Below are positions 12,769-57,411 of a DNA stretch of 64,000 nucleotides, piece after piece. Location of the stretch: the IMG/VR virus record IMGVR_UViG_3300046167_000825, positions 186,001 through 250,000 of that record, one strand, 5' to 3'. Below the pieces are notes generated by a model. It had not been told where the DNA came from. It did no database searches and was given only the letters and a program-made list of their open reading frames with translations. A program made the position numbers and the translations under genes. The stretch's first letter is position 1; each line of letters starts with the position of its first letter.

Positions 12769-13017
12769 ATGTCTTTAATCACACTGAAGGAACAAACAGA
12801 AGACACCTTTTACGGGTGTCTTGGGTCGCTAGAGATACTTGTCCAGTATAGGAAAGACCGATGGTCATACACTATGCTTGAAAAAGAAATCGGTGGGGGA
12901 TGGGGGCGACACGCCTCAGCATCCAATTTAAAAGAGGTGTTGCACAAACTCGCACAACACCTCCCGAACATGAGGATCTTCTTATTATTAGAAAATAGAG
13001 AACTTGATGAAGTCTGA
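12769..13017 (+). CDS. hypothetical protein
   Basis: GAGGAG RBS. Confidence 0.6.
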   Translation: MSLITLKEQTEDTFYGCLGSLEILVQYRKDRWSYTMLEKEIGGGWGRHASASNLKEVLHKLAQHLPNMRIFLLLENRELDEV

Positions 13018-14160
13018 AAGATGCTTGAAAGTTCCTTCCTTGTAGCCCTTTGAACTTGATTTCAAAGAACAAGAGATATTGACTGTGATGGTTTCCTCTT
13101 TTGGCAAACCATCCAACAAAGGACGATATCGCTCACCCAACATATAAATTAATTTATGGATTTGATCTTCAGAGGGAGTACCACCTTGCCAATCAAGAGA
13201 TTGCCACATCTTGAGACGATCTTTGTCATTAGCACTATAAAGTTGTTCAAATTGAACTCTTGCTTGGGACAAAAGCCCTTTTACTTTGTCTGCTGACTCT
13301 TTTTGCTTACGATAATCCTTGAAGACTTTCTTGGCTTCCTCAGAAGATTCTTTCCAAGATTTCTCCATTTGAACCCAAGCCTCGTTGTCTTCACCATTCA
13401 TCTTAGGAGAGATGTTTTCAAGTTCTTGTTCTATTCTCGTAGCCTTGGCTCTCAGCACTTGATGTTCTTCCTCTTTTTGTTGAACATTCAACTGAGCCTC
13501 TTGGAGTTCCGATTCTAGTTCGTTTATCTTATCTTGCAAGATATCCAAGCGTTCCAGTTCGACTTCTTCGTTCTTCATTGCACTTGCCAAAGATTGAGCA
13601 TCTCCCAACATCTCAGCCAGAAGCCTCTTTTGGTCTTTATCTGTTTTCTGACTGATTAACTCAAGAGAGTTCTTACCAGCCTTAATCTCGAAGGGGGCTT
13701 GCAAACCAACTTTCTGTAAATAGGCTATGAGGGAAGGCATGTCATTGTAGAAGCCTTGTGGTTTATTACTTTGCTTTGTTTCAGAGGTTTCATCCCAATG
13801 AATGACTGTGTGTTCCAAAGAGATCACGGCAAAAGGAACAGTCGCTGGGAAGAACTTTTGGAAGTCACGAATGAAGTTCGGGTGCGATTGTATCACAACA
13901 CCTTTTGGGGCTTTACCACTAGAGGCTTTTTCAACTGCCTTCAGAAACATTGCTGCACCACCACGATTGGTGTTCATGGCATATAGATTCTCTAAATGTC
14001 CATCATCAATTCCCACCAACACCTCGGCTGTTCGGTTCATGAGAGTGGCTTTCTTCAAGACGGCACGAATCTCTGGGTTCGTTTTTGCTTGTTTGATAAG
14101 TTCCGTGATAAACGCAAGGCTTTTTTGTGAATCCATTGTAGTTCTCCGTAAGTTTTTCAT
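12988..14160 (-). CDS. coiled-coil protein, possible internal virion protein
   Basis: long heptad region; LKKATLMNRTAEV motif; class B promoter immediately upstream. Confidence 0.7.
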   Translation of the reverse strand: MKNLRRTTMDSQKSLAFITELIKQAKTNPEIRAVLKKATLMNRTAEVLVGIDDGHLENLYAMNTNRGGAAMFLKAVEKASSGKAPKGVVIQSHPNFIRDFQKFFPATVPFAVISLEHTVIHWDETSETKQSNKPQGFYNDMPSLIAYLQKVGLQAPFEIKAGKNSLELISQKTDKDQKRLLAEMLGDAQSLASAMKNEEVELERLDILQDKINELESELQEAQLNVQQKEEEHQVLRAKATRIEQELENISPKMNGEDNEAWVQMEKSWKESSEEAKKVFKDYRKQKESADKVKGLLSQARVQFEQLYSANDKDRLKMWQSLDWQGGTPSEDQIHKLIYMLGERYRPLLDGLPKEETITVNISCSLKSSSKGYKEGTFKHLSDFIKFSIF

Positions 14161-14171
14161 TATTAAAAATA

Positions 14172-14184
14172 TATAGGAAGATTA
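14172..14184 (-). promoter_or_regulatory. class B promoter TAATCTTCCTATA
   Basis: exact motif 11 bp before the ATG, which has no obvious RBS. Confidence 0.6.
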
Positions 14185-14228
14185 TTCTGCTGGTGTGACT
14201 CTAACCGTAGTTCAAGAATCTTTGAGGG

Positions 14229-14567
14229 CTAGATGAGATAAGGCTTGGCGAAACCTTTCTCAATGAGCCATTGATTGATATTGGTATCTCCCACAAATAT
14301 CTCACAGAGCCATCGACCATATTTACCCTTCCCGTAAGACTTCAGAGTGACCTCTTGATTGAGGACTTGTTTTTTGAGTTCGTCACGGGAGTTCTGGGCA
14401 GCCAGTTTCAGTTCGGGATTCTTATCCCGTAGTTCGGGAGTGTCTATCCCGTACAGACGGATCTTGACCTTTTTCTGAATCATATAAAAACCCAAATCAA
14501 CATCGGCTGTTACGGTATCCCCGTCATAGACAGCCGTTATCAAGGCTTTATAATTATAGAGTTCCAT
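14229..14567 (-). CDS. thermonuclease (staphylococcal nuclease family)
   Basis: VYDGDTV, IRLYGIDTPE, GKYGRWL, INQWLIEKGFA. Confidence 0.92.
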   Translation of the reverse strand: MELYNYKALITAVYDGDTVTADVDLGFYMIQKKVKIRLYGIDTPELRDKNPELKLAAQNSRDELKKQVLNQEVTLKSYGKGKYGRWLCEIFVGDTNINQWLIEKGFAKPYLI

Positions 14568-15571
14568 TACTTTAACTCAACAGCACAGACCCATTCACCA
14601 TCGCCATACCATTGAACAGAGATGCCCTCGATGTATTTTTTGTAGGGCTTTAAGGCACGTTCAAACCGTGCTTCAATGGGCCAACCAGCACCGTCACCAT
14701 CGTATTCCTCATAGTGACCAGAATCTCCCGTGTAGCATCGAATCGTCTTCCCACTCACAAACACATCATTGGGATTGCCGTCATAGTATCGAATAACCGA
14801 CTTGAAAACATCCACAATTTCTTGTCTTTTGTTGACGAACTCTTGATTGGGGTTGTTCTTTATAGTTACGCCACTCATCTCACCATTCTCCAAGAGCCAC
14901 TCTCTTGCTGGTTTGAGTGTCGTAAACCGCTGTATCCATCCGTCATGCACAATGATGTGTTTATATTCGCCCGATGTCTCTAACACAATGCCGAAAGACA
15001 AGTTGTCTGTCAGAGCCAGCATCATTCTCCATTGTCCATTCGTGCGGTGTCTTTTTGAAGCATCTCGGAGAGGGGGTATATTCGAGATGTACTTTTTCAT
15101 CTCTTTGTAGAAAGGCTTGAAATTATCTACAACTGTTTTCGGAAATGCTTTTGCTTCTACCCTTATGAGGGTTTTTCGCAACTTCTCTCTATTTTTCGAT
15201 GCTTTCTCGGCTTGCTTCTCGGCTGACACCAATGCAGATTGGATTTTTTTCGCTAACGATGTATTCCCAGTCTGTTGAACTAACTCCAAAGTAGCCTTCA
15301 AGTTTTCGATCACTTTATCAGCATTATCTCTGACTTTTTTTGATTCATTGAACTTTGCTAGTATCTCTTTGAAAGTAGTCATCGCTTCAGCGGCAAGACG
15401 AAAACCAAAGAAATCCTCTACCACCTCTGTGTAGTCCTCTAATTGGTTGTTCTTGACTTCAATTTGCTTCATCTGTCTGAGTATGTTCTTGAACTCACGG
15501 TCAAGGTTTGATTGTTTCAAATAACGATGGGCTATTCTTTCTGTACTTGATTTTGACATAGTGTTCTCCAT
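14567..15571 (-). CDS. hypothetical, possible internal head protein
   Basis: N-terminal STERIAHRY motif, coiled coil; start may be the second Met (MSKSS). Confidence 0.7.
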   Translation of the reverse strand: MENTMSKSSTERIAHRYLKQSNLDREFKNILRQMKQIEVKNNQLEDYTEVVEDFFGFRLAAEAMTTFKEILAKFNESKKVRDNADKVIENLKATLELVQQTGNTSLAKKIQSALVSAEKQAEKASKNREKLRKTLIRVEAKAFPKTVVDNFKPFYKEMKKYISNIPPLRDASKRHRTNGQWRMMLALTDNLSFGIVLETSGEYKHIIVHDGWIQRFTTLKPAREWLLENGEMSGVTIKNNPNQEFVNKRQEIVDVFKSVIRYYDGNPNDVFVSGKTIRCYTGDSGHYEEYDGDGAGWPIEARFERALKPYKKYIEGISVQWYGDGEWVCAVELK

Positions 15572-15579
15572 AAGGATAA

Positions 15580-15756
15580 TCAGTTCATCTCACGAACTAT
15601 GAGATAAGAGAGAGGTAGGTAGAACCCAAAGAAAATTGCAAAGACAACCCATGCACTTTCAAAGAGGTACAAAAACAAGCCCACTGCTAGTGCCAACAAG
15701 AAAGAAAGCACCGTGAGAAAGAAAGAAACTAGGAATGTTTTCAATAGACGGTTCAT
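15580..15756 (-). CDS. 58-aa two-TM membrane protein (not in ORF track)
   Basis: MNRLLKTFLVSFFLTVLSFLLALAVGLFLYLFESAWVVFAIFFGFYLPLSYLIVREMN. Confidence 0.65.
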   Translation of the reverse strand: MNRLLKTFLVSFFLTVLSFLLALAVGLFLYLFESAWVVFAIFFGFYLPLSYLIVREMN

Positions 15757-15769
15757 ACCGAACTAGAAA

Positions 15770-15782
15770 TATAAAAGGGCTA
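15770..15782 (-). promoter_or_regulatory. class B promoter variant TAGCCCTTTTATA
   Basis: 13 bp upstream of the 58-aa ORF. Confidence 0.45.
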
Positions 15783-15829
15783 TTGCAATAATGCTCTGAT
15801 AAATAATGGTAAGAAAATACGAGGCGACT

Positions 15830-16453
15830 ATGGACATCAACGACATCACCTACGGGCATCCCATTAAGAAGGCATTGAAAGACCTAGATAAAATTAGAGA
15901 ACTAGGTGTGACGGAACAACTATTTTTATTGCTCGTGGAAGCCATCAAACCACCTCGCAATGACAGTGCAGAAACCCTAGAGGAGTTGGAGTATCTTTAT
16001 GAACTCCAAGAGGAAGAAAGACCTTACATGGAACGAATCATTAAACGAGCCGATGACTCTGTGTCGGGCGTGTTTTTTGATATGTGTGGTGAATGGCAGA
16101 TTGACACATATGAAGAAGAAGCAATCGAACTCATGAAAAAATGGGGGTCATTGGCTGGAGTGATGAAGTTGTATTTCAATAGGGCTAGACCATATCAGTT
16201 AGCCCCACATCATGGTATTCCTCTATTTCCTATGCCCTCTATTTCAGCGTGGTCTGGAGCATTTCCCAGTGGACACACCATCCAAGCAGAAGCCCTCTCA
16301 AGATTCTATGGGGAAAAATACCCAGAGATTGCAGAGGCGTTTGAAGATTTAGCGAAAGCCATCTCTCACACGAGATTGGTGGGTGGTTTTCATTTCCCCT
16401 CAGATATTTTGGCATCTGAAATGTTGATGGATATCTTATGGGGGCGTTTATAA
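15830..16453 (+). CDS. PAP2-family (acid phosphatase / haloperoxidase-like) protein
   Basis: KLYFNRARP, FPSGH, SHTRLVGGFHFPSD. Confidence 0.88.
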   Translation: MDINDITYGHPIKKALKDLDKIRELGVTEQLFLLLVEAIKPPRNDSAETLEELEYLYELQEEERPYMERIIKRADDSVSGVFFDMCGEWQIDTYEEEAIELMKKWGSLAGVMKLYFNRARPYQLAPHHGIPLFPMPSISAWSGAFPSGHTIQAEALSRFYGEKYPEIAEAFEDLAKAISHTRLVGGFHFPSDILASEMLMDILWGRL

Positions 16454-16825
16454 GAAGGACTGCTGTATGTGAGGGATTTCATCCTCAAAGACAAGCCAGA
16501 ACTTGAACCCCGAGTTAGCCACTGCCCCTATCTTGCGAATGAACTCGGGATCTGTCACATCTGAGCCGTAAGGCAAAGACACTGTAAACTCATTGTGGAG
16601 AAAATGAAAGAACATGATAGTTTGGTTCAACTCTTGTATCTCTAGGGTGTTTTCCCCGTCATTGATTAAGGTATATTCTGAATATATTTCTGACAGAAAA
16701 CATTCCAAATGCCACTGGAACTCCTCTAGCATTTTGTCATCAATATTAAGTGTCACCCCTTCAGTCAAGAACTTTAAGAGTTTCTGCTTATGTCGGTACA
16801 ACACAAGATCGATAACCTCAGCCAT
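16448..16825 (-). CDS. hypothetical protein
   Basis: likely start MAEVIDL after GGGGGTGG. Confidence 0.6.
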   Translation of the reverse strand: MAEVIDLVLYRHKQKLLKFLTEGVTLNIDDKMLEEFQWHLECFLSEIYSEYTLINDGENTLEIQELNQTIMFFHFLHNEFTVSLPYGSDVTDPEFIRKIGAVANSGFKFWLVFEDEIPHIQQSFL

Positions 16826-16884
16826 AAACCACCCCCAGCAATCTCTTAATTGGGGCTTGGTATTAAATAAAAAACGGAGAGAAC

Positions 16885-17073
16885 GTGAAAAATAAGGTTT
16901 TCGTAGTGACAAGGACACTTGCTTCTTTCCTCGAAGAGGGCACGATAGTTCGGGTGGTAGAGATTCTTGAAGACAGTGTTGTCATCGAAAAAGCCGATAC
17001 TGAAGGGCTGCTAACAACCATTCAAATATCGGCTTTAATGACGAGGCATCTTTACGAGGTCTACGAAGAATAA
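16885..17073 (+). CDS. small hypothetical protein (SH3-like beta pattern)
   Basis: GGAG RBS, GTG start. Confidence 0.55.
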   Translation: MKNKVFVVTRTLASFLEEGTIVRVVEILEDSVVIEKADTEGLLTTIQISALMTRHLYEVYEE

Positions 17074-17933: not shown

Positions 17934-17936
17934 TTG

Positions 17937-18623: not shown

Positions 18624-18633
18624 GAGGTTTGTC

Positions 18634-19236: not shown

Positions 19237-19276
19237 GGGTTATATATTTATTTGGGGGCATTTTCGTTCCTATTTG

Positions 19277-20784: not shown

Positions 20785-20785
20785 A

Positions 20786-24492: not shown

Positions 24493-25341
24493 CTACTTGA
24501 TCAAGCCTTTCCCAACAAGTTGAAAGAAGATACCGAATCGTAGTTTCTTGCTCAAACGGATTTTGTTGTCGTTGGAATCCATTACGGGGTGCTTGACCAT
24601 TCTCATTCGCCCAAAGGCTTTCAAAGAATCTTTATTGGCTTTGAGTCGTGCTGCTTGTGCTTCTTTGAGAGCCGACAACAGAACTGCCTCTTGCTCTTGT
24701 CGGGATAAGCCCATTTCAGCGAACTGTCCTCGCATGATATTGACACCGTAATCTGACATCTCGGTGAGAAGTCTTTTCTTTTCAGAACCAGAAGCGAACT
24801 CCAACTGGTCAAATAGAGAAGGAGATGCCTTCTTTTCGGAAGCAGATTTCATCCCACCGAGATGGTCGAACTTGCCTTTATTGATACGACTGTCGAGCCA
24901 ACTCTGGAAGCCCCTCCAAGAGGGATGAGTGCCAAAAGACTCAACGACCTCCCGTCTGTCGATATCTATCAAATACATGTCATAAGTATCTCGCCAAGAT
25001 TCTTCCCACTGCTCATTTCGGAGAGCAAGGAAACCATACCCGTCAGCGACCTCTTTGAGGAATATCGACTGGGTTCTATCACCCTTGTCACCCATAATGA
25101 TGACTTTGGCTGGAACTCGGTCACCCTTTTTCATTTGAGGGAAAGAGGGCTTACTAGAAGCAGTTCTACGGCTATTTTGCCATTCGTTATTGATTGCTTT
25201 CAGAACCTTGTGCCGTTTGATAAGATCGACAGAATCCTCCAAACCTTCTCGGTTGAGGACTTTCATTAGTTGACTCATCAGTTCGATAGGGTTCTCTTTG
25301 TTAAATGCTTCTTTTTTCATAGGGGTCTCCTTCAAAGTCAC
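24493..25341 (-). CDS. hypothetical, possible internal head protein
   Basis: RRTASS, MKSASEKKASP motifs; class B promoter upstream. Confidence 0.7.
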   Translation of the reverse strand: MTLKETPMKKEAFNKENPIELMSQLMKVLNREGLEDSVDLIKRHKVLKAINNEWQNSRRTASSKPSFPQMKKGDRVPAKVIIMGDKGDRTQSIFLKEVADGYGFLALRNEQWEESWRDTYDMYLIDIDRREVVESFGTHPSWRGFQSWLDSRINKGKFDHLGGMKSASEKKASPSLFDQLEFASGSEKKRLLTEMSDYGVNIMRGQFAEMGLSRQEQEAVLLSALKEAQAARLKANKDSLKAFGRMRMVKHPVMDSNDNKIRLSKKLRFGIFFQLVGKGLIK

Positions 25342-25352
25342 TATCTCTTGAG

Positions 25353-25365
25353 TATAGAGAGATTA
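25353..25365 (-). promoter_or_regulatory. class B promoter TAATCTCTCTATA
   Basis: exact motif overlapping the upstream stop codon. Confidence 0.6.
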
Positions 25366-25686
25366 TTTCTTCATGATATCTTTGGTGTCTGAACCCTCTG
25401 GGAGTTTTTCAACAGCCAAATCAATCAGAGAGGTATTAGCGAGAACAGACTTCAGTTCGTGGAAAGACCTTTTCCAATCTTGTTCGAGGAGTACCTCTGT
25501 TTTCCCTTCGTGACCATGAATGGTACGAACATCCCCAATGCTATCATAAACACCCGTAGAAGGAGTGTCACTCAACCAAGTGAGGGCTACCTTCCCGTTA
25601 TCGAATATGACTCCTTGTGCTATTCTCCCAGTGCCACTGACCCCACTGTCATCTTCGACACGGTGTAAATAAAATAACTTTGCCAT
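25363..25686 (-). CDS. conserved phage hypothetical protein
   Basis: LHRVEDDSGVSGTGRIAQG...HGHEGKT; GGAG RBS before ATG 25686. Confidence 0.8.
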   Translation of the reverse strand: MAKLFYLHRVEDDSGVSGTGRIAQGVIFDNGKVALTWLSDTPSTGVYDSIGDVRTIHGHEGKTEVLLEQDWKRSFHELKSVLANTSLIDLAVEKLPEGSDTKDIMKK

Positions 25687-48299: not shown

Positions 48300-48788
48300 A
48301 TGGCAGATATCTACAAAGCAAACGAGGACATCGTACTGCGAGTGAAAAACATCATCAAGGACAACCACCCAGAGTTGTTCTTGATCCAAGATGAAATAGC
48401 AATTCTCATCCGAGAAAAGGCTGGTAAGCGTGGTGGTCGTATCACTTACGCAAAGACAATGAAAGCCCCCAAGATTCTTGAAATCTTAGGGGACACAGAC
48501 TACAAGTTTATCCTTGAGATCGCTGGTGATGAATGGCAAAACTTGTCATCCCCACAACAGACAGCATTATTGGATCATCATCTGTGTGCTATGCGAGCCG
48601 AAGAAGAAGAAGAAACGGGCGAAGTGAAATACTTTGTTGCTCCACCAGATATTGGGTACTACTATGACGAACTAGACCGTCATGGGAACTGGCGACCCGA
48701 ACTGGATGGGGAAGACCCAGATGAACTAGAGGGGATACCTTCTATTGATATGGCATCTATCGTCACGGGTGCTACCACAGAAGCCTAA
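48300..48788 (+). CDS. putative phage metallopeptidase-like protein
   Basis: YKFILEI...WQNL...ALLDHHLC...PPDI; HExxH degenerate. Confidence 0.65.
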   Translation: MADIYKANEDIVLRVKNIIKDNHPELFLIQDEIAILIREKAGKRGGRITYAKTMKAPKILEILGDTDYKFILEIAGDEWQNLSSPQQTALLDHHLCAMRAEEEEETGEVKYFVAPPDIGYYYDELDRHGNWRPELDGEDPDELEGIPSIDMASIVTGATTEA

Positions 48789-50182: not shown

Positions 50183-50705
50183 TAGAGACCAAAAAACTTG
50201 GGTTGTCCTAGAACTCACTTCAAAAGGTGAATACCTTGTTCGTGAGGGAACACTAGAGAAATATCTCAGAAGACATCTAGGTATAGATGAAGATCACTCC
50301 ATCTATATTCCTCTCCATACTTATAAAAAGGGTGGGAGAGAAATCCAACTAGAAGGGATACAAGGATACGCCTTTATAGCCAGTGGTTTGATGGATTATG
50401 ATTATTTCGCTCTTGAACAACATGACTACACTCGCAGTGTTCTTTCGATAGATAGAGGTAAATACAGAACAATCACAACACTACCAGATAGTTCCATTCA
50501 ACATATCCGAGATAAGATTCGAGAAGAAATCTCGACAGACCTTGATGAGGGTATGTTTATTCGTGTCATTCTAGGGAACTACATCTCCTTAGAAGGTGAA
50601 ATTATTGGGTTCGATGGTGATAAAGCATTGGTGGAAGTCGGTCTGAGATCGATTCACGCTATTGTTCCAATCCCAAGAATCTGTTGTGACCCTATTAAGG
50701 AGTGA
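50172..50705 (+). CDS. NusG-like transcription elongation factor (NGN + KOW)
   Basis: WVVLEL...IYIP...QGYAFI; KOW GMFIRVILGNYISLEGEI...VEVGL. Confidence 0.75.
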   Translation: MADDRDQKTWVVLELTSKGEYLVREGTLEKYLRRHLGIDEDHSIYIPLHTYKKGGREIQLEGIQGYAFIASGLMDYDYFALEQHDYTRSVLSIDRGKYRTITTLPDSSIQHIRDKIREEISTDLDEGMFIRVILGNYISLEGEIIGFDGDKALVEVGLRSIHAIVPIPRICCDPIKE

Positions 50706-51310
50706 ATATGTGGTGGAGTGGACATAAAATACTAGAGCCTCACGAGTTGGAGAATCGCTTTTCTACTGAGGATTGTATCTTCAATAATGGGATTACCTTC
50801 ACAGAGGTGATGTCTGAGGAGATGAAAGCACAAGTTGATAAGATTAAATCGTTTTTGGATATGATTCCTAGACGGGAAGCCGATTTTGTTGAGTTGTACT
50901 ACTTCCAACACATGAAGCAAACGGATATCGCAAACTTGTTTTGTGTGACCCAACCGACTGTCTGTTATCGTCTTCAAAGGGCTTCTGCTCGGATTAAGTT
51001 CCTTGTAGAACTCCCCGATTTAACCATAGCACAGATTCAGAATGACCTTGAAGAAGTCTTGGTTGACCCTCTCGATGTGAAGATCATGGTGCAAATGTAT
51101 CAAACGACATGTCAATCAGAAGTGGCGAAGAATCTCAATGTTTCTCAAGGGCTAGTTCGACATAGATTTATTAGGTCTATCAAACGATTGGGTTGTGACG
51201 GCTACGATGAACTGGTTGCCGTTTATAAAAAAATCTCCGAAAACTTGAACATCCTCAGAGAAGTGCAACGACCCTCTCTTTCCGAAACTTCTTTCATTGT
51301 CTTACACTAA
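50702..51310 (+). CDS. tandem sigma-region-4-like HTH protein
   Basis: LYYFQHMKQTDIANLFCVTQPTVCYRLQRA and TCQSEVAKNLNVSQGLVRHR. Confidence 0.7.
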   Translation: MNMWWSGHKILEPHELENRFSTEDCIFNNGITFTEVMSEEMKAQVDKIKSFLDMIPRREADFVELYYFQHMKQTDIANLFCVTQPTVCYRLQRASARIKFLVELPDLTIAQIQNDLEEVLVDPLDVKIMVQMYQTTCQSEVAKNLNVSQGLVRHRFIRSIKRLGCDGYDELVAVYKKISENLNILREVQRPSLSETSFIVLH

Positions 51311-51320
51311 TCCGTTTATA
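51308..51320 (+). promoter_or_regulatory. class B promoter TAATCCGTTTATA
   Basis: at the start of the structural block. Confidence 0.6.
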
Positions 51321-51347
51321 GACGGACACATTTATTGAGGGACACAA

Positions 51348-51659: not shown

Positions 51660-52090
51660 TGTCATCACAAAGAATTGAGAGTGCCTTCAAATATAAGTAT
51701 GTGACGGTAACGGCAGACACTTATTATTACGAAATTGTGGCAGACACCCAACTTAATATCTCAGTTCGAGATATCGTAGCCCCCAACGGTCAGTTGATAG
51801 ACTCCATGACACTTCTCCCAGCAGAAGTTGTTTCTGATATAGCCGCAAGTATTCTTGTGGTGAAAGATTTATTAGGTCTTGCTACTCGTCTTACGGGTGA
51901 GGCAGATTTCGTTTCGGCTACCTCCGTTACGGTGGAGTTCGCAGAAGCCCAGAACTCCACAGATTATTCTGTTCTTCTTGACCCTTCTGTTTTCTTAGAT
52001 TTTCGTGTCACAGCGAAAACTACGGTGAGTTTCACTATTGAATCCTCGACAACATATACGGGTTCAGTTCGCTGGTCTTTATTTGTGTAG
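51659..52090 (+). CDS. putative virion structural protein
   Basis: beta-rich, Thr/Ser/Val-rich. Confidence 0.6.
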   Translation: MSSQRIESAFKYKYVTVTADTYYYEIVADTQLNISVRDIVAPNGQLIDSMTLLPAEVVSDIAASILVVKDLLGLATRLTGEADFVSATSVTVEFAEAQNSTDYSVLLDPSVFLDFRVTAKTTVSFTIESSTTYTGSVRWSLFV

Positions 52091-52099
52091 GGAGTTGAT

Positions 52100-53296
52100 A
52101 TGGGTCAAAGTAAGTTTTCAAAATTAGATGGGGTGTCGTTCGACCCAGAGAACTACGCCAATACTCAGATAACCATCAATCATGTTGATGGGACATTGGT
52201 GTTTCAAGACGAAGAAATAACCGCTTTGAAACTATCTCAATTGGTGGGCTTCGAGAATATTGATAATGTTTTTCTCGTGGGCAAAACGGGTAGTGGTGCT
52301 AGATATAAGACCATCCAAGATGCTGTTGATGCAGTTTCCGTGACGAGTTCTTATTTAGAACCGTCTGTTATAATCGTTACGGCTGGTGTTTATCAAGAAT
52401 CTTTGACTATCCAGAAGGATGGGCTTCACATTATTGGAATGGGGCGAGTCGCTCTCAAAGGTGACGATGGTTCTCCCTCTGTTTTGATTGATGACTTGGG
52501 TGTTGTTATCCCTCAAGTTCTCCACATAGAAAATCTTATCATTGAGAAAGACCAAGACGGTGAATCTTGTGTCGAAGTATCTGGTTCGTTGGATTCAACT
52601 CTCCTTCAAAAAGGGTTGACTCTTAAAAATTGTTCTTTAGAGGCTACTGGGATTGGGTCATACCCAATCAAAGCCGATAAAGTCAATTCTATCACTGTGC
52701 TTGACGGTACTTGGGGGGCTAGTCGCCTAGACTCCATTTGCTTTATTTCACAAGTGGCATATTTCCATTGTGTTGGTTTGCAACAAGGTACGGCTTTTCA
52801 GATGTCTTATGATGACTCTGCTGATGCTCCCCTCACAAAAACCTCCGAGTATATTATTTCTAGTATGCTTGGGAGTGGTAACTTCTTGATTTCTTTGTTG
52901 GGGACGGGTTCTTTGACTGTCAACCGTAGCACCATTGGTGATTTATCCATTACGGGAGATAGACTACTGTCAGTGTCGGACAGTAAGACAATGAACCTTA
53001 CGGTACAAGGGACGACAGCGTGTTCTGTGGATGCGACAAAGCATGGGACAATCGGTGGAGATATCACTGCCACTCTTTCCCTCAGTGAACTTAGGGATTC
53101 TGTGGATTTAATAGGAGTGGTCAGCGTTAGCGTGCCGTTGCCTTTGCCTTACCCCAACTCTTTTTATATGGTCAATCTCGATGGCTATGATGGGTCAGCC
53201 CCTTATGTCACCAATAAGACTACCACGACTTTTGATGTGGTCTTTCCCGATGGGTTGGTTCACACCACAACAGTGCAGTATCAAGTTATTCTTTGA
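52100..53296 (+). CDS. putative fibre/spike protein with parallel beta-helix region
   Basis: YKTIQDAVDA...IIVTAGVYQE pectin-lyase-fold entry motif. Confidence 0.6.
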   Translation: MGQSKFSKLDGVSFDPENYANTQITINHVDGTLVFQDEEITALKLSQLVGFENIDNVFLVGKTGSGARYKTIQDAVDAVSVTSSYLEPSVIIVTAGVYQESLTIQKDGLHIIGMGRVALKGDDGSPSVLIDDLGVVIPQVLHIENLIIEKDQDGESCVEVSGSLDSTLLQKGLTLKNCSLEATGIGSYPIKADKVNSITVLDGTWGASRLDSICFISQVAYFHCVGLQQGTAFQMSYDDSADAPLTKTSEYIISSMLGSGNFLISLLGTGSLTVNRSTIGDLSITGDRLLSVSDSKTMNLTVQGTTACSVDATKHGTIGGDITATLSLSELRDSVDLIGVVSVSVPLPLPYPNSFYMVNLDGYDGSAPYVTNKTTTTFDVVFPDGLVHTTTVQYQVIL

Positions 53297-53302
53297 TCGT
53301 GG

Positions 53303-53315
53303 TAATATGCCTATA
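53303..53315 (+). promoter_or_regulatory. class B promoter TAATATGCCTATA
   Basis: before the head-protein/terminase operon. Confidence 0.6.
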
Positions 53316-53343
53316 TTTTCAACAAAGATAATAGAGGTGTCTT

Positions 53344-53928
53344 ATGAGTACGGATAAATATGACTTTTGGAACGGCTTGATGTCGGGTGCATACATGAAT
53401 GTGAAAGGTGCATCTGACGGGGTCGATATGTTTTTAGAGGAAAGCCTTGATAAAGAAGCAACCGATAGAACCTTATCAGATTTGACTGATAAAGGTAGAG
53501 CCAACAATGCTTTGAGTTTGCCCGTTTCCGATGGAACACGGGTGGCTTTCGTAGCGAACTTGGGTTCGATTCTGTCTTTAGATGACGCTCCCGAAAACAA
53601 TGCCAAAGGGACAGTTGTTACTGTTAAGTCTGCTGGAGGGGCTATCACTTCCCACGATGGTCGTGTTTTTGTGAAATGGGATGATGGTCAGTTTCGTGCA
53701 GTCCACCAAAATCATCTTCGTTTGGCGAGTGGACACTCCAAGACACAAAAAGCCGCTGGTAACACAATGCGAGTTGCTTCTCTTGGTGACTTGACAGACT
53801 TCTTGAGAATTAGTTCGGATACTCTTATCCATAAAGCCACAGAAGATATCTGGTCATTCAAAAAAGATGCTGACGGTTTCGTCATAGAGCGTTTGCTCGG
53901 TGAAGACGGTAAGCCTTTGAAATTATAG
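53344..53928 (+). CDS. putative head-associated protein
   Basis: KEAT, RLAS, KAAG, RVAS motifs. Confidence 0.65.
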   Translation: MSTDKYDFWNGLMSGAYMNVKGASDGVDMFLEESLDKEATDRTLSDLTDKGRANNALSLPVSDGTRVAFVANLGSILSLDDAPENNAKGTVVTVKSAGGAITSHDGRVFVKWDDGQFRAVHQNHLRLASGHSKTQKAAGNTMRVASLGDLTDFLRISSDTLIHKATEDIWSFKKDADGFVIERLLGEDGKPLKL

Positions 53929-53937
53929 GATTGTATA

Positions 53938-54576
53938 ATGAAGAAAATATCATTTAAGAAGAAGCAACGGTCTTTTCTGGAAGAAAAGTGGGGGGCATCC
54001 TTAGAACCGAAAAGTCAAATGACTAGAACGGCTGGTGAAGTTCGTTTCGTTAAGGATAACTCGAATGATGCTAGTTCGTGGGCTTGGAAACAAGGCCCCT
54101 CCGAACGCTCAATGCAACCCGATTACAACTTTAAGCCAAAGCGAAAGAAAGCATTAGCCAAAGTTCTCAGAAGCACAACTGCTTCTATGGGACACGCTAT
54201 GAGTGCCTACAACTCTTTCACGAAAATCAAGAGTGCTGATGTATCCCCCGATGGGGCATTGGGTGGGAAAGGGTACATACAAAAGATTATGGATATGCGA
54301 AAGCAGTACATGAATGTCGTTGAGGCGTTATCTGCTTTGAGTGACACCATTTATGACGAGATTCAAGCCCCACATTGGGCTGCGATTTCCCGTCAAGAAA
54401 CGCCCGAAGACAAAGCAGAGGTCACCCAAATCATACAAGATGCCGAGAGCATTAAAGAAGACCCAGAGAGTTGGGCAGAAGAACAAGAGGAAACAATGGA
54501 TGAAGATCACACCCCAATGGGCAAGACTGCTTCTTCAAAATCTATTCCTAAAAAGTATTTAAGAGGTGACAAATGA
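53938..54576 (+). CDS. putative head-associated protein
   Basis: RTAG, KTAS motifs. Confidence 0.65.
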   Translation: MKKISFKKKQRSFLEEKWGASLEPKSQMTRTAGEVRFVKDNSNDASSWAWKQGPSERSMQPDYNFKPKRKKALAKVLRSTTASMGHAMSAYNSFTKIKSADVSPDGALGGKGYIQKIMDMRKQYMNVVEALSALSDTIYDEIQAPHWAAISRQETPEDKAEVTQIIQDAESIKEDPESWAEEQEETMDEDHTPMGKTASSKSIPKKYLRGDK

Positions 54577-56645
54577 GTTCAAAAATACCATCAGACCATC
54601 TAGTTCCTAGAGGTCTAAACGGCTTGATCGATACCTACCCCGATATGAACTACGGCTTGGGGACATTGGAGAAGACTTTCATGACAGATGGCACAGCCGA
54701 CTTCACTTCGGGACTCCCCGATGGGATAGTTCGTGGTGAGGATGAAGGTCTTGGTGATCTTGGTGATTTTATGAAAGAAGGGAACATTGCTGATATGTCT
54801 TTCATTGATATTGAAGGCGATGCTCACATCCAAAGTCTGCCCGAATATGGTGAAGCAGACAGTTCGCTCGAATCTGCTTGGGGAGAACTACAAACTCCAG
54901 CCATATATGCTGAACACCAAAAAGATTTGACAGCCATTCCCCGTGCCATAACTCAGACTGAAGTAGAAGAAGATGTCCTAGAAGAAGTCGCCATGAAATG
55001 TGCGAGGTTGTTGCATAATGGTGCGAGCATGAAGAATCTCCAGCGAATCGCTTTCGACCGATTGGGTTCTGATGTTACGGAACTTCGTGAGGATTTTGAA
55101 TACCTCACGGAAGAAAGAGGCTTGATGGGAAATGTTTATGTCCTTGCGAGTGCTTACCCACAAATCGAAACGGGGCATTGGAATAAAGCCATTAAGAAGG
55201 CTTCCCCACACGCTCAGTACTTGTTGATTGATGACGGTCACGCTCTATCAAGCCAAGAGACATTCAATGGAATGAAAGTGGTTTTGGATGTTCCTTACAA
55301 GCAAGCCTTTGAGGTCTATAAGCCTTTACTTGAAGCCTCTGGTCGTAAACTAGCCTCTGGTGATTCAAGGGCTGTCCTCAAACAAGCCTTCCTAACTACG
55401 CCTCAGAAGAAAATCCAAGAGGTATTCCATGAGAAGGCATACAGAGTCGTTGACACTGTTTCCATGAAGGAAGCCCAACAACAGTTCGGGGAATACACCC
55501 CAGAAGAACAAAGAGTTTATCAAGATAGTGAACGCCAAGATAGAATCGCACTCAAAAAAGCCCACAAGAAACTAGCCAGTGCTTACCGTGCTGGGATGAT
55601 GAGCCGAGATGAATTGAAGAAATTGGCGGGTCTGCGTAGTCACACTCAAATCGAACTAGAACTACATAGGCTGAAACTCAAGAGTCACGCTGCCTCTGAA
55701 TCTTATTCTGGTGCAAAAAACTCTATCGCCAATCAAGAATCTTTGAAGCATGAACAAGGAGATATCACTGGGCGAGTTAAGAAAGCGAAAGAAGAAAAAC
55801 GAGTTGCTTCCGTGAGGGCAAAAGTTGCTGTTATTAAACAAGCAATCGACAGAGGTGTTCGTGGGAATGAACTAGCCCGTATCATTAAGCAGAAACTCAA
55901 CAAAGCAGACCTCCGTATTGCTTCTCCGATATTAAATCCCATCTTGAAAGAAACCAATGCACTCGCTCTCCCTTCTGCTCAGACGGAAGAATATAGTGGT
56001 GCTTCTTTCACAGCCCACCAAGAACATCGAAGAACCGCCCATGTCGAGAAGTTATCTCAAACTGAGATAGCCATCGGTAAAATGGCTCGTTGGACTAGAC
56101 AACAGATGACAGAAGGGACAATCGGAAAAACTCTCACGGCTATGCTAAAGACCAAGTTCGCTTCCCCCTTCTTGAAGAAAGCCTCAACCACAATCCAAGA
56201 AATCCGAACATCCCATGAAGGCTTGTCTGGGCATCTTTATGTGGATGCTGAGGCGTATGCCTCTCCCGTTGGGACAAAAGGTTGTGATGAAGGTGGCTTG
56301 AAGCACCGAGCCAATCAGTTGCCTTTCGTTATGGGGATGGACAGATGTGGTTCTTGTTCTTTTGCCAGTCGTAAAGCCGATGGTACTTCTGTTTGTCAGA
56401 AATACAACAAGCCGATTATCACCGAACTCCCTTCTGAGTCTAAAGACTACCAAGCAGAGAATATCCGAATGGCAGATGCCAGTGATGCTGAAATAACGGC
56501 TTCTATTTTTGCTTCTCGATACGAACCCTCAGAGTTCAATCTAGCGAACTCCGAACTAGATAACTTTTCCTTTGAAGAAATGGCGACAGCAGAAACTCTC
56601 TCAAATGTCTTTTTCGGTGGGATGGAGATACACGATGACGAATAA
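54573..56645 (+). CDS. large putative head-associated protein with Cys cluster
   Basis: multiple [KR]xA[S] motifs; C...CGSC...C near the C-terminus. Confidence 0.7.
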   Translation: MSSKIPSDHLVPRGLNGLIDTYPDMNYGLGTLEKTFMTDGTADFTSGLPDGIVRGEDEGLGDLGDFMKEGNIADMSFIDIEGDAHIQSLPEYGEADSSLESAWGELQTPAIYAEHQKDLTAIPRAITQTEVEEDVLEEVAMKCARLLHNGASMKNLQRIAFDRLGSDVTELREDFEYLTEERGLMGNVYVLASAYPQIETGHWNKAIKKASPHAQYLLIDDGHALSSQETFNGMKVVLDVPYKQAFEVYKPLLEASGRKLASGDSRAVLKQAFLTTPQKKIQEVFHEKAYRVVDTVSMKEAQQQFGEYTPEEQRVYQDSERQDRIALKKAHKKLASAYRAGMMSRDELKKLAGLRSHTQIELELHRLKLKSHAASESYSGAKNSIANQESLKHEQGDITGRVKKAKEEKRVASVRAKVAVIKQAIDRGVRGNELARIIKQKLNKADLRIASPILNPILKETNALALPSAQTEEYSGASFTAHQEHRRTAHVEKLSQTEIAIGKMARWTRQQMTEGTIGKTLTAMLKTKFASPFLKKASTTIQEIRTSHEGLSGHLYVDAEAYASPVGTKGCDEGGLKHRANQLPFVMGMDRCGSCSFASRKADGTSVCQKYNKPIITELPSESKDYQAENIRMADASDAEITASIFASRYEPSEFNLANSELDNFSFEEMATAETLSNVFFGGMEIHDDE

Positions 56646-57411
56646 AGAAGCGGGTATGCCTCAGAACCCAGAAATACTAGGTCAAGTTTTGCATGATGTC
56701 CTTTGTACTTTGCGAACTATGTATGTTCATTATCAGAACTTACATTGGGAGAGTAAAGGCGATTCCTTTTACAGCGACCATCTTTTGTTCCAACGCTTGT
56801 ATGAAGGCGTGGCAGAAGAAACAGATGCACTCGCTGAGAAGATTCTTGGCTTGACGGGACAGACCAAATGGGTTTCTGACCTCCATACTTTCCAACACGG
56901 TCATGATACTTTACAGATATGGTACGAGTTCACTAAAGGTGACGATTCAACTAGCCGTGCTTTCTTCTCTGAGATGTACTTCCAAGAACAACTCGATTAT
57001 GCTCGTGCTGTCCTAGAAGAAAGCAACAATATGACTTACGGTTTGGATGACTTTCTAGGAGGTCTGGCTTCAAAACACGAGGAACATGTTTATCTTCTCC
57101 GTCAAAGATGGGGCAAAGTAGAACATGAATCACGAGTGGCAAGTGGTGCTGGACATCATTTCCATGACAACCCCGAAAAGAGAGAGGTTCGTCAACTTCA
57201 GCAGAGCAAAGCGAAAGGCAATGCCATCACAGACAAACCCTCCGATGCACCACCGACTCCCTCTGATATCTTGGAAGATAAGGGTAAAGAGTTCTCTACT
57301 CTATCTCGTTATGTTATTAACACGGCTCAACCGACCAAGAAGCCGATGCCCTCATCTCGTGCCGAACTCCCAAAACAAGCCAAGCGAGTTCGCCTAACAA
57401 GGAGTAAGTAA
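56635..57411 (+). CDS. Dps/ferritin-like protein with C-terminal extension
   Basis: HYQNLHWESKGDSFYSDHLLFQRLYE...DALAEK...KHEEHVYLL; GGAG RBS before ATG 56635. Confidence 0.8.
   Translation: MTNKEAGMPQNPEILGQVLHDVLCTLRTMYVHYQNLHWESKGDSFYSDHLLFQRLYEGVAEETDALAEKILGLTGQTKWVSDLHTFQHGHDTLQIWYEFTKGDDSTSRAFFSEMYFQEQLDYARAVLEESNNMTYGLDDFLGGLASKHEEHVYLLRQRWGKVEHESRVASGAGHHFHDNPEKREVRQLQQSKAKGNAITDKPSDAPPTPSDILEDKGKEFSTLSRYVINTAQPTKKPMPSSRAELPKQAKRVRLTRSK

What the first reader, a model, noticed from the sequence alone, without database searches (positions are those of the whole stretch)
12988..57411. Recurrent [KR]-x-A-[SG] motif in putative head proteins, a candidate prohead-protease cleavage or packaging signal
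Seen: 12988 gene (KKAT, NRTAE); 14567 gene (ERIAHRY, RLAA); 24493 gene (RRTASS, MKSASEKKAS); 53344 (KEAT, RLASG, KAAG, RVASL); 53938 (RTAG, KTASS); 54573 (RKLASG, KKLASA, KRVASV, LRIASP, RRTAH, KKAST); Dps-like 56635 (RVASG, KQAK). The motif often sits at domain boundaries. All seven genes are downstream of a class B motif, even though three lie 30-40 kb from the head cluster. Established: T4 gp21 and phiKZ gp175 cleave many internal head proteins at short recurring motifs. Inference: this motif marks proteins that are cleaved and packaged into the capsid, identifying the scattered 12988, 14567 and 24493 proteins as ejected cargo.
Basis: inference. Interest (0 to 1): 0.68.

Follow-up and report, generated by a model that had tools for sequence, protein, structure and literature searches.

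The report
Likely capsid-protease cut-site motif
A short amino-acid motif (Lys/Arg, any residue, Ala, then Ser or Gly) piles up in the scaffold, the capsid protease and a few neighbouring proteins of an uncultured huge phage and its relatives. It is most likely where the capsid-maturation protease cuts, which gives a sequence-only way to predict which proteins are processed inside these capsids.

Summary
The motif is real and non-random, but only for five of the seven listed genes. The genome as a whole shows no excess (102 observed, 91 expected).

**Where it concentrates**
- Window genes 53344, 53938, 54573, 56635 and 24493 together: 20 observed, 2.9 expected.
- Genes 12988 and 14567: 1 observed, 0.9 expected.
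- Twelve replication and packaging enzymes: 7 observed, 5.9 expected.

**Evidence just outside the window**
- The head module there holds a prohead protease with the herpesvirus assemblin/T4 gp21 fold.
- An acidic scaffold-like gene follows it and is the most motif-rich protein in the genome.
- In 47 distinct relatives this scaffold carries 279 sites against 46–50 expected. The reversed motif is not enriched.
- Every scaffold has a site just before a conserved C-terminal tail.
- The protease family has sites at three fixed positions flanking its catalytic domain.
- In the 24493 family, domain insertions and deletions join exactly at the sites.
- In a 485 kb relative, the top four proteins genome-wide are the scaffold, the 690-aa homologue, an acidic protein and the protease.

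**Verdict:** this is probably the cleavage motif of this clade's prohead protease, likely cut between Ala and Ser/Gly. That differs from the Glu-ending motifs of T4 and phiKZ. Cleavage, virion location and ejection are untested.

The parts
53344..53928 (+). 194-aa protein with 5 strict sites: KGAS 53404-53415, KSAG 53626-53637, RLAS 53719-53730, KAAG 53749-53760, RVAS 53770-53781
   Evidence: 5 observed against 0.4 expected, p = 5e-5. Only the V-[KR]-S-A-[SG]-G-E site is conserved in orthologues L007, L008 and L010. The LR745208.1 orthologue has none, so the enrichment is lineage-specific.
53938..54576 (+). 212-aa protein with two sites. RTAG (54025-54036) sits at the end of a variable N-terminal leader. 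KTAS (54523-54534) follows an acidic stretch near the C-terminus.
   Evidence: In four orthologues the leader varies from 6 to 27 residues (29 in the window protein). [KR]-T-A-G is kept directly before the conserved core that starts EVRF-[VI]-KD. A C-terminal [KR]-x-A-S is also kept.
54573..56645 (+). 690-aa protein with 8 strict sites: 55194, 55347, 55569, 55620, 55800, 55914, 56154 and 56175 (each 12 nt long)
   Evidence: 8 observed against 1.3 expected, p = 5e-5. The Ala-Ser dipeptide occurs 17 times against 5.4 expected. Fifteen homologues down to 33% identity carry 1-8 sites (three or more in 14 of them) against about 1.2 expected. The sites at residues 259 and 448 are conserved and the others turn over. 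The LR745208.1 homologue has 7 against 1.1.
56635..57411 (+). Dps/ferritin-like protein (258 aa). RVAS (57133-57144) lies about 10 residues after the ferritin domain. KEAG lies at residues 4-7 (56644-56655).
   Evidence: Ferritin and DUF5856 matches below Pfam's cut-offs, and PHROG 3636. [KR]-x-A-S at the same place in orthologues L007, L008 and L010. In LR745208.1 the ferritin domain and the C-terminal module are parts of two different proteins, split at this point.
24493..25341 (-). Modular protein whose likely true start is the ATG at 25320. Sites: RTAS 25156-25167, KSAS 24838-24849, KKAS 24823-24834.
   Evidence: 3 observed against 0.46 expected (p = 0.012). In alignment A3 the invariant N-terminal module ends at RR-x-A-S. 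Deletions of the middle domain, an inserted domain and a swap to a Peptidase_C39_2-type domain all join at the motif sites. The genome holds no paralogue of the module.
12988..14160 (-). It has no strict site.
   Evidence: 0 observed against about 0.5 expected. No homologue in five related genomes. It does carry the promoter-like motif at 14171-14185.
14567..15571 (-). It has one strict site (RDAS), which is the chance level.
   Evidence: 1 observed against 0.36 expected. No homologue in five related genomes. No copy of the promoter-like motif upstream.
58764..60602 (+). Terminase large subunit. It anchors the head and packaging module next to the motif-rich genes.
   Evidence: PHROG 2 and 9 (E = 4e-21, 8e-20) and a TerL_ATPase match. 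1 site against 0.92 expected.
61181..62863 (+). Portal protein
   Evidence: PHROG 16240, E = 4e-32. 0 sites against 0.49 expected.
53303..53315 (+). Promoter-like motif TAATATGCCTATA, 41 nt upstream of gene 53344.
   Evidence: The genome has eight strict copies. Seven lie up to 127 nt upstream of a called gene on the same strand, and the eighth sits just after the portal gene. Loose matches in the window: 9 against 2.8 expected from shuffles.

Best explanation
[KR]-x-A-[S/G] (mostly [KR]-x-A-S, often K-K-A-S) is the recognition motif of this phage clade's prohead (capsid-maturation) protease.

The window belongs to a 289 kb contig of an uncultured huge phage. Its head module runs from the motif-rich genes through the terminase and portal inside the window. 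It continues just outside with an acidic protein, the protease, an acidic scaffold-like protein and the major capsid protein.

Proposed course of events:
1. The protease, scaffold, acidic protein and several internal proteins assemble into the prohead.
2. The protease trims itself. It cuts at a conserved site about 25 residues from its N-terminus, at a Lys-x-Ala just after its catalytic domain, and in many relatives at a site just before its C-terminal helical domain.
3. It chops the scaffold at its many sites. This includes one to three sites 20-45 residues from the C-terminus, which would detach the conserved tail. That tail presumably holds the shell, as at the herpesvirus maturation site.
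4. It removes leader or targeting segments from internal proteins (24493, 53938, the Dps-like protein, the 690-aa protein).

The cut is most likely between Ala and Ser/Gly.

**Shown here:** the enrichment, its restriction to head-module proteins, its conservation across relatives, its placement at module boundaries, and the presence and fold of the protease.

**Inferred:** that cleavage happens, which bond is cut, that the proteins are inside the capsid, and that any of them is ejected.
For: **1. The protease exists**
- Genome 254451-255863 matches PHROG 18299 'head maturation protease' (E = 1.7e-13).
- Residues 44-264 of its AlphaFold model match herpesvirus proteases and T4 gp21. VIA-align gives Z = 9.4 to 1vzv, 8.9 to 4v08 and 8.2 to 5jbl. 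The best Foldseek hit is 5jbl.
- It sits between an acidic protein and the scaffold plus capsid gene (PHROG 2522, E = 1e-55).

**2. The scaffold is the most motif-rich protein**
- In this genome it has 6 sites against 0.5 expected.
- The same gene position in 47 distinct relatives gives 279 sites. Composition predicts 46 and shuffles within 20-residue blocks give 49.5 +/- 6.5. 41 of the 47 have four or more sites.
- [KR]-x-A-S is 9.7-fold enriched. The reversed motif is 0.96-fold. T4-type [LI]-x-E is 1.2-fold and phiKZ-type [SAG]-x-E is 0.97-fold.
- All 47 have a site in the last 62 residues, before the conserved tail LS-x-LW-x-SAPDVS.

**3. The protease family shows fixed sites**
- 120 members carry 292 sites against 96 expected, piled at residues 20-39 (84 of 120 strict), 280-299 (Lys291 and Ala293 invariant) and 380-399.
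- These positions border segments the model predicts as disordered.

**4. Module junctions coincide with sites**
- This holds in the 24493 family, the 53938 family and the Dps-like family.

**5. Independent whole-genome replicate**
- In LR745208.1 (485 kb, 598 ORFs, protease 47% identical) the four most enriched proteins are the scaffold (9 against 1.25), the 690-aa homologue (7 against 1.12), the acidic protein (4 against 0.49) and the protease (4 against 0.81).
- The cultured Tunturiibacter phage Tunturi_5 shows the same pattern: gp332 has 6 against 1.1, gp328 has 8 against 1.5, and the protease has a C-terminal KVAS.

**6. Calibration on T4, where cleavage is established**
- [LI]-x-E is enriched in scaffold gp22 (16 against 5.7) and in gp21 (7 against 2.6), but not in gp24.

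**7. Precedent for the layout**
- Herpesvirus assemblin cuts after Ala at a release site behind the protease and at a maturation site near the scaffold C-terminus, which frees the scaffold from the capsid protein (PMC4498786).
Against: - There are no proteomic or biochemical data for this phage or any close relative. The Tunturi paper has none.
- The catalytic Ser and His could not be mapped. Pfam S77 and S78 do not match the genome, the profile comparison with T4 gp21 is insignificant, and there is no sequence match to any solved structure.
- In the low-confidence model of the 690-aa protein (pLDDT 58.6) most sites lie in predicted helices, not linkers.
- Several sites in that protein change Ser to Pro, Lys or Gln at the fourth position in relatives.
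- This phage's own protease has Arg, not Ser/Gly, after the invariant Lys-x-Ala. It lacks the third site seen in many relatives.
- The enrichment in gene 53344 is not conserved.
- Counts summed over relatives are inflated by shared ancestry at the conserved sites.
- A more distant protease relative, an Erwinia Alexandravirus, shows no enrichment, so the specificity would be confined to this clade.
Confidence: 0.7

Rival explanations
1. The motif is a binding or structural signature that is never cut. It could be a docking motif for incorporation into the prohead, or a recurring helix-end feature of Lys/Ala-rich scaffold-type proteins.
For: - The scaffold C-terminal sites lie in a conserved block that could be a binding surface in its own right.
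- Many sites in the 690-aa protein fall in predicted helices.
- Lys/Ala-rich patterns such as [KR]-x-A-[KR] and [KR]-x-A-A are also about 3-4-fold enriched in scaffolds.
Against: - The ordered motif is 6-10-fold enriched, while its reverse and its permutations are 0.3-1.6-fold.
- Sites sit at the ends of variable leaders and at insertion and deletion junctions.
- Sites flank the protease domain in disordered segments, as autoprocessing sites do.
- Scaffolds carry repeated copies between acidic blocks, which suits fragmentation better than docking.
Confidence: 0.12
2. The sites are cut, but by another enzyme. Candidates are the putative phage metallopeptidase at window 48300-48788, or a host protease.
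For: - A PhageMetallopep gene (PF18894, E = 2.6e-19) is conserved in the window and in four relatives, within 10 kb upstream of the 690-aa gene.
- Nothing here ties the prohead protease to the motif biochemically.
Against: - That gene lies among replication genes (primase-like and clamp loader).
- The motif is most concentrated in the protein next to the prohead protease and in the prohead protease itself, at positions typical of autoprocessing.
- The pattern matches the known T4 and herpesvirus arrangements.
Confidence: 0.08
3. The motif is a phosphorylation site for a basophilic Ser/Thr kinase, with Lys/Arg three residues before the Ser.
For: [KR]-x-x-S is a common kinase consensus, and Ser dominates the fourth position: 218 of 256 distinct scaffold sites.
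Against: - Ala directly before the Ser is required by the pattern and is what carries the enrichment: Ser or Gly in its place is not enriched (1.05- and 1.39-fold).
- Gly, which cannot be phosphorylated, fills the fourth position at 38 of 256 sites and at conserved sites such as RTAG.
- Thr is much less enriched than Ser, 2.6-fold against 9.7-fold.
- The family scans matched no kinase, but only part of the genome's proteins were scanned.
Confidence: 0.04
4. Chance or amino-acid composition.
For: - The genome-wide count is near expectation (102 against 91).
- Two of the seven listed genes are at chance level.
Against: - Three proteins pass genome-wide multiple-test correction.
- Local-shuffle and reversed-motif controls hold.
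- The same orthologous families top an unbiased ranking in an independent 485 kb genome.
Confidence: 0.02

Closest known systems
T4 gp21 processing of scaffold gp22, the internal proteins and their capsid targeting sequences (motif L/I-x-E, cut after Glu)
   Same: - A protease of the same fold sits next to the scaffold and capsid genes.
- A short recurring motif is enriched in the scaffold and in the protease itself (T4 checked here).
- N-terminal targeting or leader peptides end at a site, as proposed for 24493 and 53938.
   Different: - The motif is unrelated: a basic residue, then Ala, then Ser/Gly, in place of a hydrophobic residue and Glu. [LI]-x-E is not enriched here.
- No detectable sequence similarity to gp21.
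- The capsid protein shows no N-terminal propeptide or site.
- The leader of the 24493 family is a 58-residue folded-looking module, not a 10-residue peptide.
phiKZ gp175 and SPN3US gp245 processing of inner-body and ejection proteins (S/A/G-x-E and A-x-E; PMC10052503)
   Same: A giant-phage head in which many internal proteins, the portal-side proteins and the protease itself are trimmed at one short motif, and where several motif copies sit inside propeptides.
   Different: - [SAG]-x-E is at chance in these scaffolds (0.97-fold).
- The cultured relatives found for this protease are Tunturi_5, cluster C mycobacteriophages, Erwinia Alexandravirus, a Xanthomonas phage and a Bacillus phage. No phiKZ-like phage appeared among those listed.
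- No virion proteomics exists for this clade.
Herpesvirus assemblin with its release and maturation sites (cut after Ala, usually Ala-Ser; PMC4498786)
   Same: - These are the best structural matches of the protease model (Z up to 9.4).
- Ala followed by Ser sits at the presumed cut.
- There is a site directly behind the protease domain.
- There are sites 20-45 residues from the scaffold C-terminus, in front of a conserved tail, as at the maturation site that frees the scaffold from the capsid protein.
   Different: - The third residue before the cut is basic here, not Val/Leu/Ile.
- Protease and scaffold are separate genes in this phage, though they are fused in the mycobacteriophage relatives.
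- The scaffold carries many sites rather than one.
- The catalytic triad has not been mapped.

Membership tests
Prohead/capsid-maturation serine protease of the assemblin/gp21 fold | Assemblin-type fold of the catalytic domain | tested here: met
   The AlphaFold model is well predicted over most of residues 45-260. VIA-align gives Z = 9.4 (1vzv), 8.9 (4v08) and 8.2 (T4 gp21, 5jbl), and 28 of the top 30 rows are herpesvirus proteases or gp21. The best Foldseek hit is 5jbl, E = 9e-3.
Prohead/capsid-maturation serine protease of the assemblin/gp21 fold | Match to a curated prohead-protease sequence family | tested here: inconclusive
   PHROG 18299 'head maturation protease' matches at E = 1.7e-13. 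Pfam Peptidase_S77 and S78 find nothing in the genome at E <= 1. Pfam finds nothing for the protein. No sequence match to any solved structure.
Prohead/capsid-maturation serine protease of the assemblin/gp21 fold | Conserved catalytic Ser and His | tested here: inconclusive
   His55, His127, Ser134, Ser178 and His229 are invariant in 33 sequences, and His122 and His162 nearly so. His122 or His127 with Ser178 has the spacing of T4 His85 and Ser140 (T4 residue numbers from memory). The profile alignment to gp21 is not significant (probability 0.2), and no residue-level superposition was available.
Prohead/capsid-maturation serine protease of the assemblin/gp21 fold | Gene placed with the portal, scaffold and major capsid genes | tested here: met
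   The order is portal, several intervening genes (among them a 981-aa and an acidic protein), protease, acidic scaffold-like protein, a protein of about 216 aa, then the capsid protein. The order downstream of the protease recurs in most of the 57 related loci examined.
Prohead/capsid-maturation serine protease of the assemblin/gp21 fold | Proteolytic activity on head proteins | not testable with these tools
   This needs enzyme assays or virion proteomics.
Protease-processed scaffold and internal head proteins (T4, phiKZ and SPN3US type) | One short motif recurring in the scaffold, the protease and a limited set of head proteins | tested here: met
   The same signature was reproduced in T4.
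Protease-processed scaffold and internal head proteins (T4, phiKZ and SPN3US type) | Motif of the form x-x-Glu with the cut after Glu | tested here: not met
   [LI]-x-E is 1.2-fold and [SAG]-x-E is 0.97-fold in the 47 scaffolds. [KR]-x-A-[SG] is 5.6-fold.
Protease-processed scaffold and internal head proteins (T4, phiKZ and SPN3US type) | Substrates present in proheads or virions with new N-termini at the sites | not testable with these tools
   No proteomics exists for this clade.
Herpesvirus assemblin substrate sites (release and maturation sites) | Ala before and Ser after the cut | tested here: inconclusive
   The motif has Ala-Ser at 218 of 256 distinct scaffold sites and Ala-Gly at the rest. 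That the cut falls between them is inferred, not shown.
Herpesvirus assemblin substrate sites (release and maturation sites) | Hydrophobic residue (Val/Leu/Ile) three positions before the cut | tested here: not met
   That position is Lys or Arg by definition of the motif. [VLI]-x-A-S is only 2-fold enriched.
Herpesvirus assemblin substrate sites (release and maturation sites) | A site near the scaffold C-terminus, ahead of the capsid-binding tail | tested here: met
   All 47 scaffolds have at least one site in the last 62 residues and 40 of the 47 have at least two, before the conserved tail. That the tail binds the capsid protein is an assumption.

The most novel reading that the evidence does not exclude
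This widespread clade of huge phages has a prohead protease with herpesvirus-like Ala/Ser cleavage specificity. It also has a modular loading system. In that system a conserved N-terminal module ending in RR-x-A-S serves as a removable capsid-targeting tag, behind which different cargo domains have been swapped in. One variant in the 24493 family carries a C39-type peptidase-like domain. The cargo would be packaged and delivered into the host with the DNA. The motif would then allow the packaged proteome of uncultured huge phages to be read from sequence alone.
Probability: 0.3. Interest if true: 0.72.

Novelty: new variant of a known kind. Interest (0 to 1): 0.58.

Why it matters
Prohead proteases and their recurring cut-site motifs are well known in T4, phiKZ and SPN3US, where the cut follows Glu. 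What appears new here is the motif itself.

- **A different specificity.** The motif has a basic residue, any residue, Ala, then Ser or Gly. I found no report of it in two full-text literature searches. It belongs to a very large, mostly uncultured clade: more than 1,700 protease homologues in the protein database, with contigs of 140-540 kb.
- **A practical use.** If confirmed, the motif gives a sequence-only rule for listing the proteins processed inside these capsids. That includes scattered accessory genes such as 24493, which no annotation method can currently place.
- **An evolutionary link.** It would add a second parallel between tailed-phage and herpesvirus capsid maturation, in specificity and in site layout, beyond the shared protease fold.
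- **A ready test system.** The cultured phage Tunturi_5 shows the same signature, so the prediction can be tested directly.

Tried and rejected
- **Nucleotide search.** Megablast of the head region against GenBank phages found nothing.
- **Family scans of the seven proteins.** PHROGs and Pfam gave only the Dps/ferritin hit and weak noise.
- **Close-relative scan.** A scan of viral contigs with the 690-aa protein returned only identical copies.
- **ESM Atlas look-ups.** The 690-aa and 212-aa proteins gave no usable lead.
- **Solved structures.** A profile of the protease against PDB sequences gave only acidic low-complexity noise.
- **T4 gp21.** Profile comparison with gp21 was not significant, so the catalytic residues stay unmapped.
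- **Tunturi_5 gp328.** BLASTP of the 690-aa and 981-aa proteins against this 'DNA ejection protein' showed no homology.
- **Paralogues of the 24493 N-terminal module.** A profile search found none in this genome or in LR745208.1.
- **Genes 12988 and 14567.** No homologues in five related genomes, so conservation could not be tested. An empty result says little, because those records are fragments.
- **Complex prediction.** The protease domain with the scaffold C-terminal 60 residues gave no verdict (score 0.01). This counts neither for nor against.
- **The 690-aa model.** Its structure was too uncertain (pLDDT 58.6) to settle whether the sites are exposed.
- **Genes downstream of the promoter-like motif.** Almost all have no family matches, so I could not show it is a late or structural promoter.
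- **DNA-level cause.** Rejected, because codons differ between sites.

Full report
**Setting**

The window is bases 186001-250000 of a single 289,014-base viral contig. The contig is 44.7% G+C and CheckV estimates it as 66% complete. It has no near relative among GenBank phages at the nucleotide level. Its nearest relatives are contigs from metagenome assemblies, some of them from Tara Oceans samples. More distantly it resembles the 485 kb uncultured phage LR745208.1.

I called about 310 genes on the contig with a simple codon-usage caller and used them for all genome-wide counts.

**The observation**

Strict [KR]-x-A-[SG] matches are:

| Gene | Strict sites |
|---|---|
| 12988 | 0 |
| 14567 | 1 |
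| 24493 | 3 |
| 53344 | 5 |
| 53938 | 2 |
| 54573 | 8 |
| 56635 (Dps-like) | 2 |

Across the whole contig the motif is not over-represented: 102 observed against 91 expected from each protein's composition. It is, however, concentrated in a few proteins.
- The six most enriched are a 342-aa acidic protein outside the window (6 against 0.5), gene 53344 (5 against 0.4), gene 54573 (8 against 1.3), a 211-aa protein at genome 180034 (4 against 0.6), a 241-aa acidic protein at genome 253128 (3 against 0.4) and gene 24493 (3 against 0.46).
- The first three pass Bonferroni correction.
- Shuffling within 20-residue blocks, which preserves local composition, gives the same picture.

| Set | Observed | Expected |
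|---|---|---|
| Twelve replication and packaging enzymes of the window (RecA, RecD2-like helicase, ribonucleotide reductase, PhoH, clamp loader, primase-like, terminase, portal and others) | 7 | 5.85 |
| Five supported genes | 20 | 2.87 (p = 4e-11) |
| Genes 12988 and 14567 | 1 | 0.87 |
| Rest of the genome | 67 | 81 |

Codons differ from site to site, so the signal is in the protein and not the DNA. Within the 690-aa protein the Ala-Ser dipeptide alone occurs 17 times against 5.4 expected.

**What surrounds it**

Inside the window:
- The terminase large subunit is at 58764-60602 and the portal at 61181-62863.

Immediately beyond the window end, in genome coordinates:
- a 981-aa protein (250119-253064);
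- the 241-aa acidic protein (253128-253853);
- a 212-aa protein;
- a 470-aa protein matching PHROG 18299 'head maturation protease' (254451-255863, E = 1.7e-13);
- the 342-aa acidic protein (255897-256925);
- a 216-aa protein;
- the major capsid protein (257761-258672, PHROG 2522, E = 1e-55).

That is the position and composition of a scaffolding protein.

**The protease**
- An AlphaFold model built on 33 homologues has a well-predicted domain at about residues 45-260. It also has disordered stretches at 1-31, 291-317 and 342-379, and a confident helical C-terminal domain at 380-470.
- The best Foldseek hit is T4 gp21 (5jbl). VIA-align gives Z = 9.4 to varicella-zoster protease, 8.9 to pseudorabies protease and 8.2 to gp21, and 28 of the first thirty rows are herpesvirus proteases or gp21.
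- Pfam S77 and S78 do not match.
- Sequence and profile comparisons to solved structures and to gp21 are not significant.
- The fold assignment is therefore sound, but the catalytic Ser and His are only guessed from invariant residues.

**Comparative evidence: scaffold**

The protease family is very large: more than 1,700 database hits, about 50% identical over the full length. A scan of viral contigs returned 80 loci with flanks.
- In 47 distinct relatives the acidic gene directly downstream carries 279 sites. Composition predicts 46, and local shuffles give 49.5 +/- 6.5.
- 41 of the 47 have four or more sites. The capsid gene and the small gene before it have almost none.
- [KR]-x-A-S is 9.7-fold enriched, [KR]-x-A-G is 2-fold, the reversed motif is 0.96-fold and other permutations are 0.3-1.6-fold.
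- The T4-type and phiKZ-type motifs are at chance.
- Sites lie near the N-terminus (31 of 47) and between acidic blocks in repeated modules.
- Every scaffold has a site in a conserved C-terminal block, K-x-A..RPQP-x-K-A-S-x-G...LG..V..K-x-A-S. That block precedes the conserved tail LS-x-LW-x-SAPDVS..F.

**Comparative evidence: protease**

Among 120 family members there are 292 sites against 96 expected. They pile up at three positions:
- residues 20-39, as W-G-K-V-R-T-A-S followed by a linker of variable length (84 of 120 strict, 111 of 120 if Ala is allowed at the fourth position);
- residues 280-299, where Lys291 and Ala293 are invariant, right after the catalytic domain and at the start of a disordered stretch;
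- residues 380-399, just before the C-terminal helical domain.

This is the layout expected of self-processing sites.

**Comparative evidence: window genes**
- **690-aa protein (54573).** Fifteen homologues down to 33% identity carry 1-8 sites, three or more in 14 of them, against about 1.2 expected. The sites at residues 259 and 448 are conserved throughout and the others come and go.
- **212-aa protein (53938).** In four orthologues the leader varies from 6 to 27 residues (29 in the window protein) and always ends in [KR]-T-A-G directly before the conserved core. A second site follows the acidic stretch near the C-terminus.
- **Dps-like protein (56635).** Orthologues keep [KR]-x-A-S about ten residues after the ferritin domain. 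In LR745208.1 the ferritin domain and the C-terminal module belong to two different proteins, split at that point.
- **Gene 24493.** This is the clearest case. An invariant 58-residue N-terminal module ends at RR-x-A-S. Behind it, relatives carry the middle domain, lack it, hold an extra inserted domain, or carry a C39-type peptidase-like domain instead. The joins fall at the motif sites.
- **Gene 53344.** Only one site is conserved, and the LR745208.1 orthologue has none, so its richness is lineage-specific.
- **Genes 12988 and 14567.** No excess, and no homologues in five related genomes.

**Replication and calibration**
- I assembled the full LR745208.1 record (485,034 bases, 55% G+C, 598 called genes) and ranked every protein. 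The top four are the scaffold (9 against 1.25), the 690-aa homologue (7 against 1.12), the acidic protein upstream of the protease (4 against 0.49) and the protease (4 against 0.81).
- The cultured Tunturiibacter phage Tunturi_5 (308 kb, protease domain 44% identical) shows the same pattern. gp332 after the protease has 6 against 1.1, the annotated 'DNA ejection protein' gp328 has 8 against 1.5, and the protease has a C-terminal K-V-A-S.
- More distant protease relatives do not show it: cluster C mycobacteriophage Cali, where the protease is fused to a long C-terminal region, and an Erwinia Alexandravirus. The specificity would therefore be confined to this clade.
- As a calibration, the same count in T4, where cleavage is established, shows [LI]-x-E enriched in scaffold gp22 (16 against 5.7) and in gp21 (7 against 2.6), but not in gp24.

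**Interpretation**

The best explanation is that this motif is the recognition site of the clade's prohead protease.

Reasons to place the cut between Ala and Ser/Gly:
- It would leave Ser or Gly as the new N-terminus, which is stabilising in bacteria. A cut right after the basic residue would often expose Lys, Leu or Phe. This argument rests on general knowledge and is an inference.
- Herpesvirus assemblin, the best structural match, cuts after Ala. It has a release site behind the protease and a maturation site near the scaffold C-terminus that frees the scaffold from the capsid protein (PMC4498786). The layout here mirrors that.

The known giant-phage motifs end in Glu (PMC10052503), so this would be a different specificity on the same fold.

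Nothing here shows that cleavage occurs, that the window proteins are in the capsid, or that any is ejected. The complex prediction returned no verdict.

**Rivals**
- A motif that is never cut, serving for binding or as a helix end. This is hard to square with the strict residue order, the leader and junction positions, and the self-processing layout.
- A different enzyme, such as the conserved putative metallopeptidase at 48300-48788. This cannot be excluded without biochemistry.
- A kinase site. This is unlikely given the required Ala and the Gly alternatives.
- Chance. This is excluded by the replicate genome.

**Novelty and verdict**

Two full-text literature searches found cleavage motifs only for T4, phiKZ-like phages and SPN3US, and nothing for this clade. 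I rate the finding a new variant of a known kind: ordinary in mechanism, new in specificity, and useful as a predictor.

It holds for genes 53344-57411 and 24493, and fails for 12988 and 14567.

**Constraints**

Noticed in passing
window 14171-14185 (-), 25352-25366 (-), 53303-53315 (+), 62863-62877 (+), 2945-2959 (+); also genome 76769, 113850, 167825 and 271084: A promoter-like motif, ATAATCTnTCTATAT. The genome has eight strict copies of its core. Seven lie up to 127 nt upstream of a called gene on the same strand, and the eighth sits just after the portal gene. A phage sigma-factor gene lies at window 50702-51310.
   Followed up: partly
genome 250119-253064 (just past the window end; L001:119-3064): A 981-aa protein lies inside the head module, between the portal and the protease. 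At the same place relatives carry a protein with Pfam Topoisom_I (type IB topoisomerase) hits. In L009 it is a 2,084-aa fusion that also has a PolyA_pol domain. It might be a packaged enzyme. It has a single motif site.
   Followed up: no
L093:6121-9981 (Mycobacterium phage Cali gp93) and other cluster C mycobacteriophages: The gene annotated 'tape measure' (or hypothetical) starts with a domain homologous to this prohead protease (about 31% identity over 240 residues) and lies two genes before the major head protein. It looks like a protease fused to a long scaffold-like region, so the annotation seems wrong.
   Followed up: partly
genome 254451-255863 (protease), residues 181-229: Cys181, Cys188, Cys191, Cys202, Cys227 and His229 are invariant in 33 homologues. 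This suggests a metal-binding insertion inside the protease domain, which T4 gp21 and the herpesvirus proteases are not known to have.
   Followed up: no
window 14229-14567 (-): A 112-aa endonuclease (PHROG 452, E = 9e-29) is wedged between genes 14567 and 12988. It is likely a homing-type endonuclease insertion.
   Followed up: no
window 48300-48788 (+): A putative phage metallopeptidase (PF18894, E = 2.6e-19) is conserved next to the primase-like and clamp-loader genes in four relatives. Its role is unknown, and it is the only other peptidase candidate seen near the head genes.
   Followed up: partly
loci L031, L032, L065, L082 (downstream of the protease match): These relatives show no long open frame where the scaffold gene should be when read with table 11. 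This could reflect frameshifts, assembly errors or a different genetic code.
   Followed up: no
genome 257139-257789 (L001:7139-7789): A 216-aa Ala/Gly/Thr/Ser-rich protein with very few charged residues is conserved between the scaffold and capsid genes in nearly all relatives. The gene at the same position is annotated 'tail fiber protein' in Tunturi_5 and 'virion structural protein' in an Erwinia phage. It may be a capsid accessory or decoration protein. It has no motif sites.
   Followed up: no
genome 180034-180669 and 177908-180034 (L003:14034-14669, 11908-14034): Two adjacent proteins of unknown function lie outside the window. The 211-aa one has 4 motif sites against 0.6 expected, and the 708-aa one has 3 against 1.0. 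The first has a homologue in LR745208.1 with 3 sites.
   Followed up: partly
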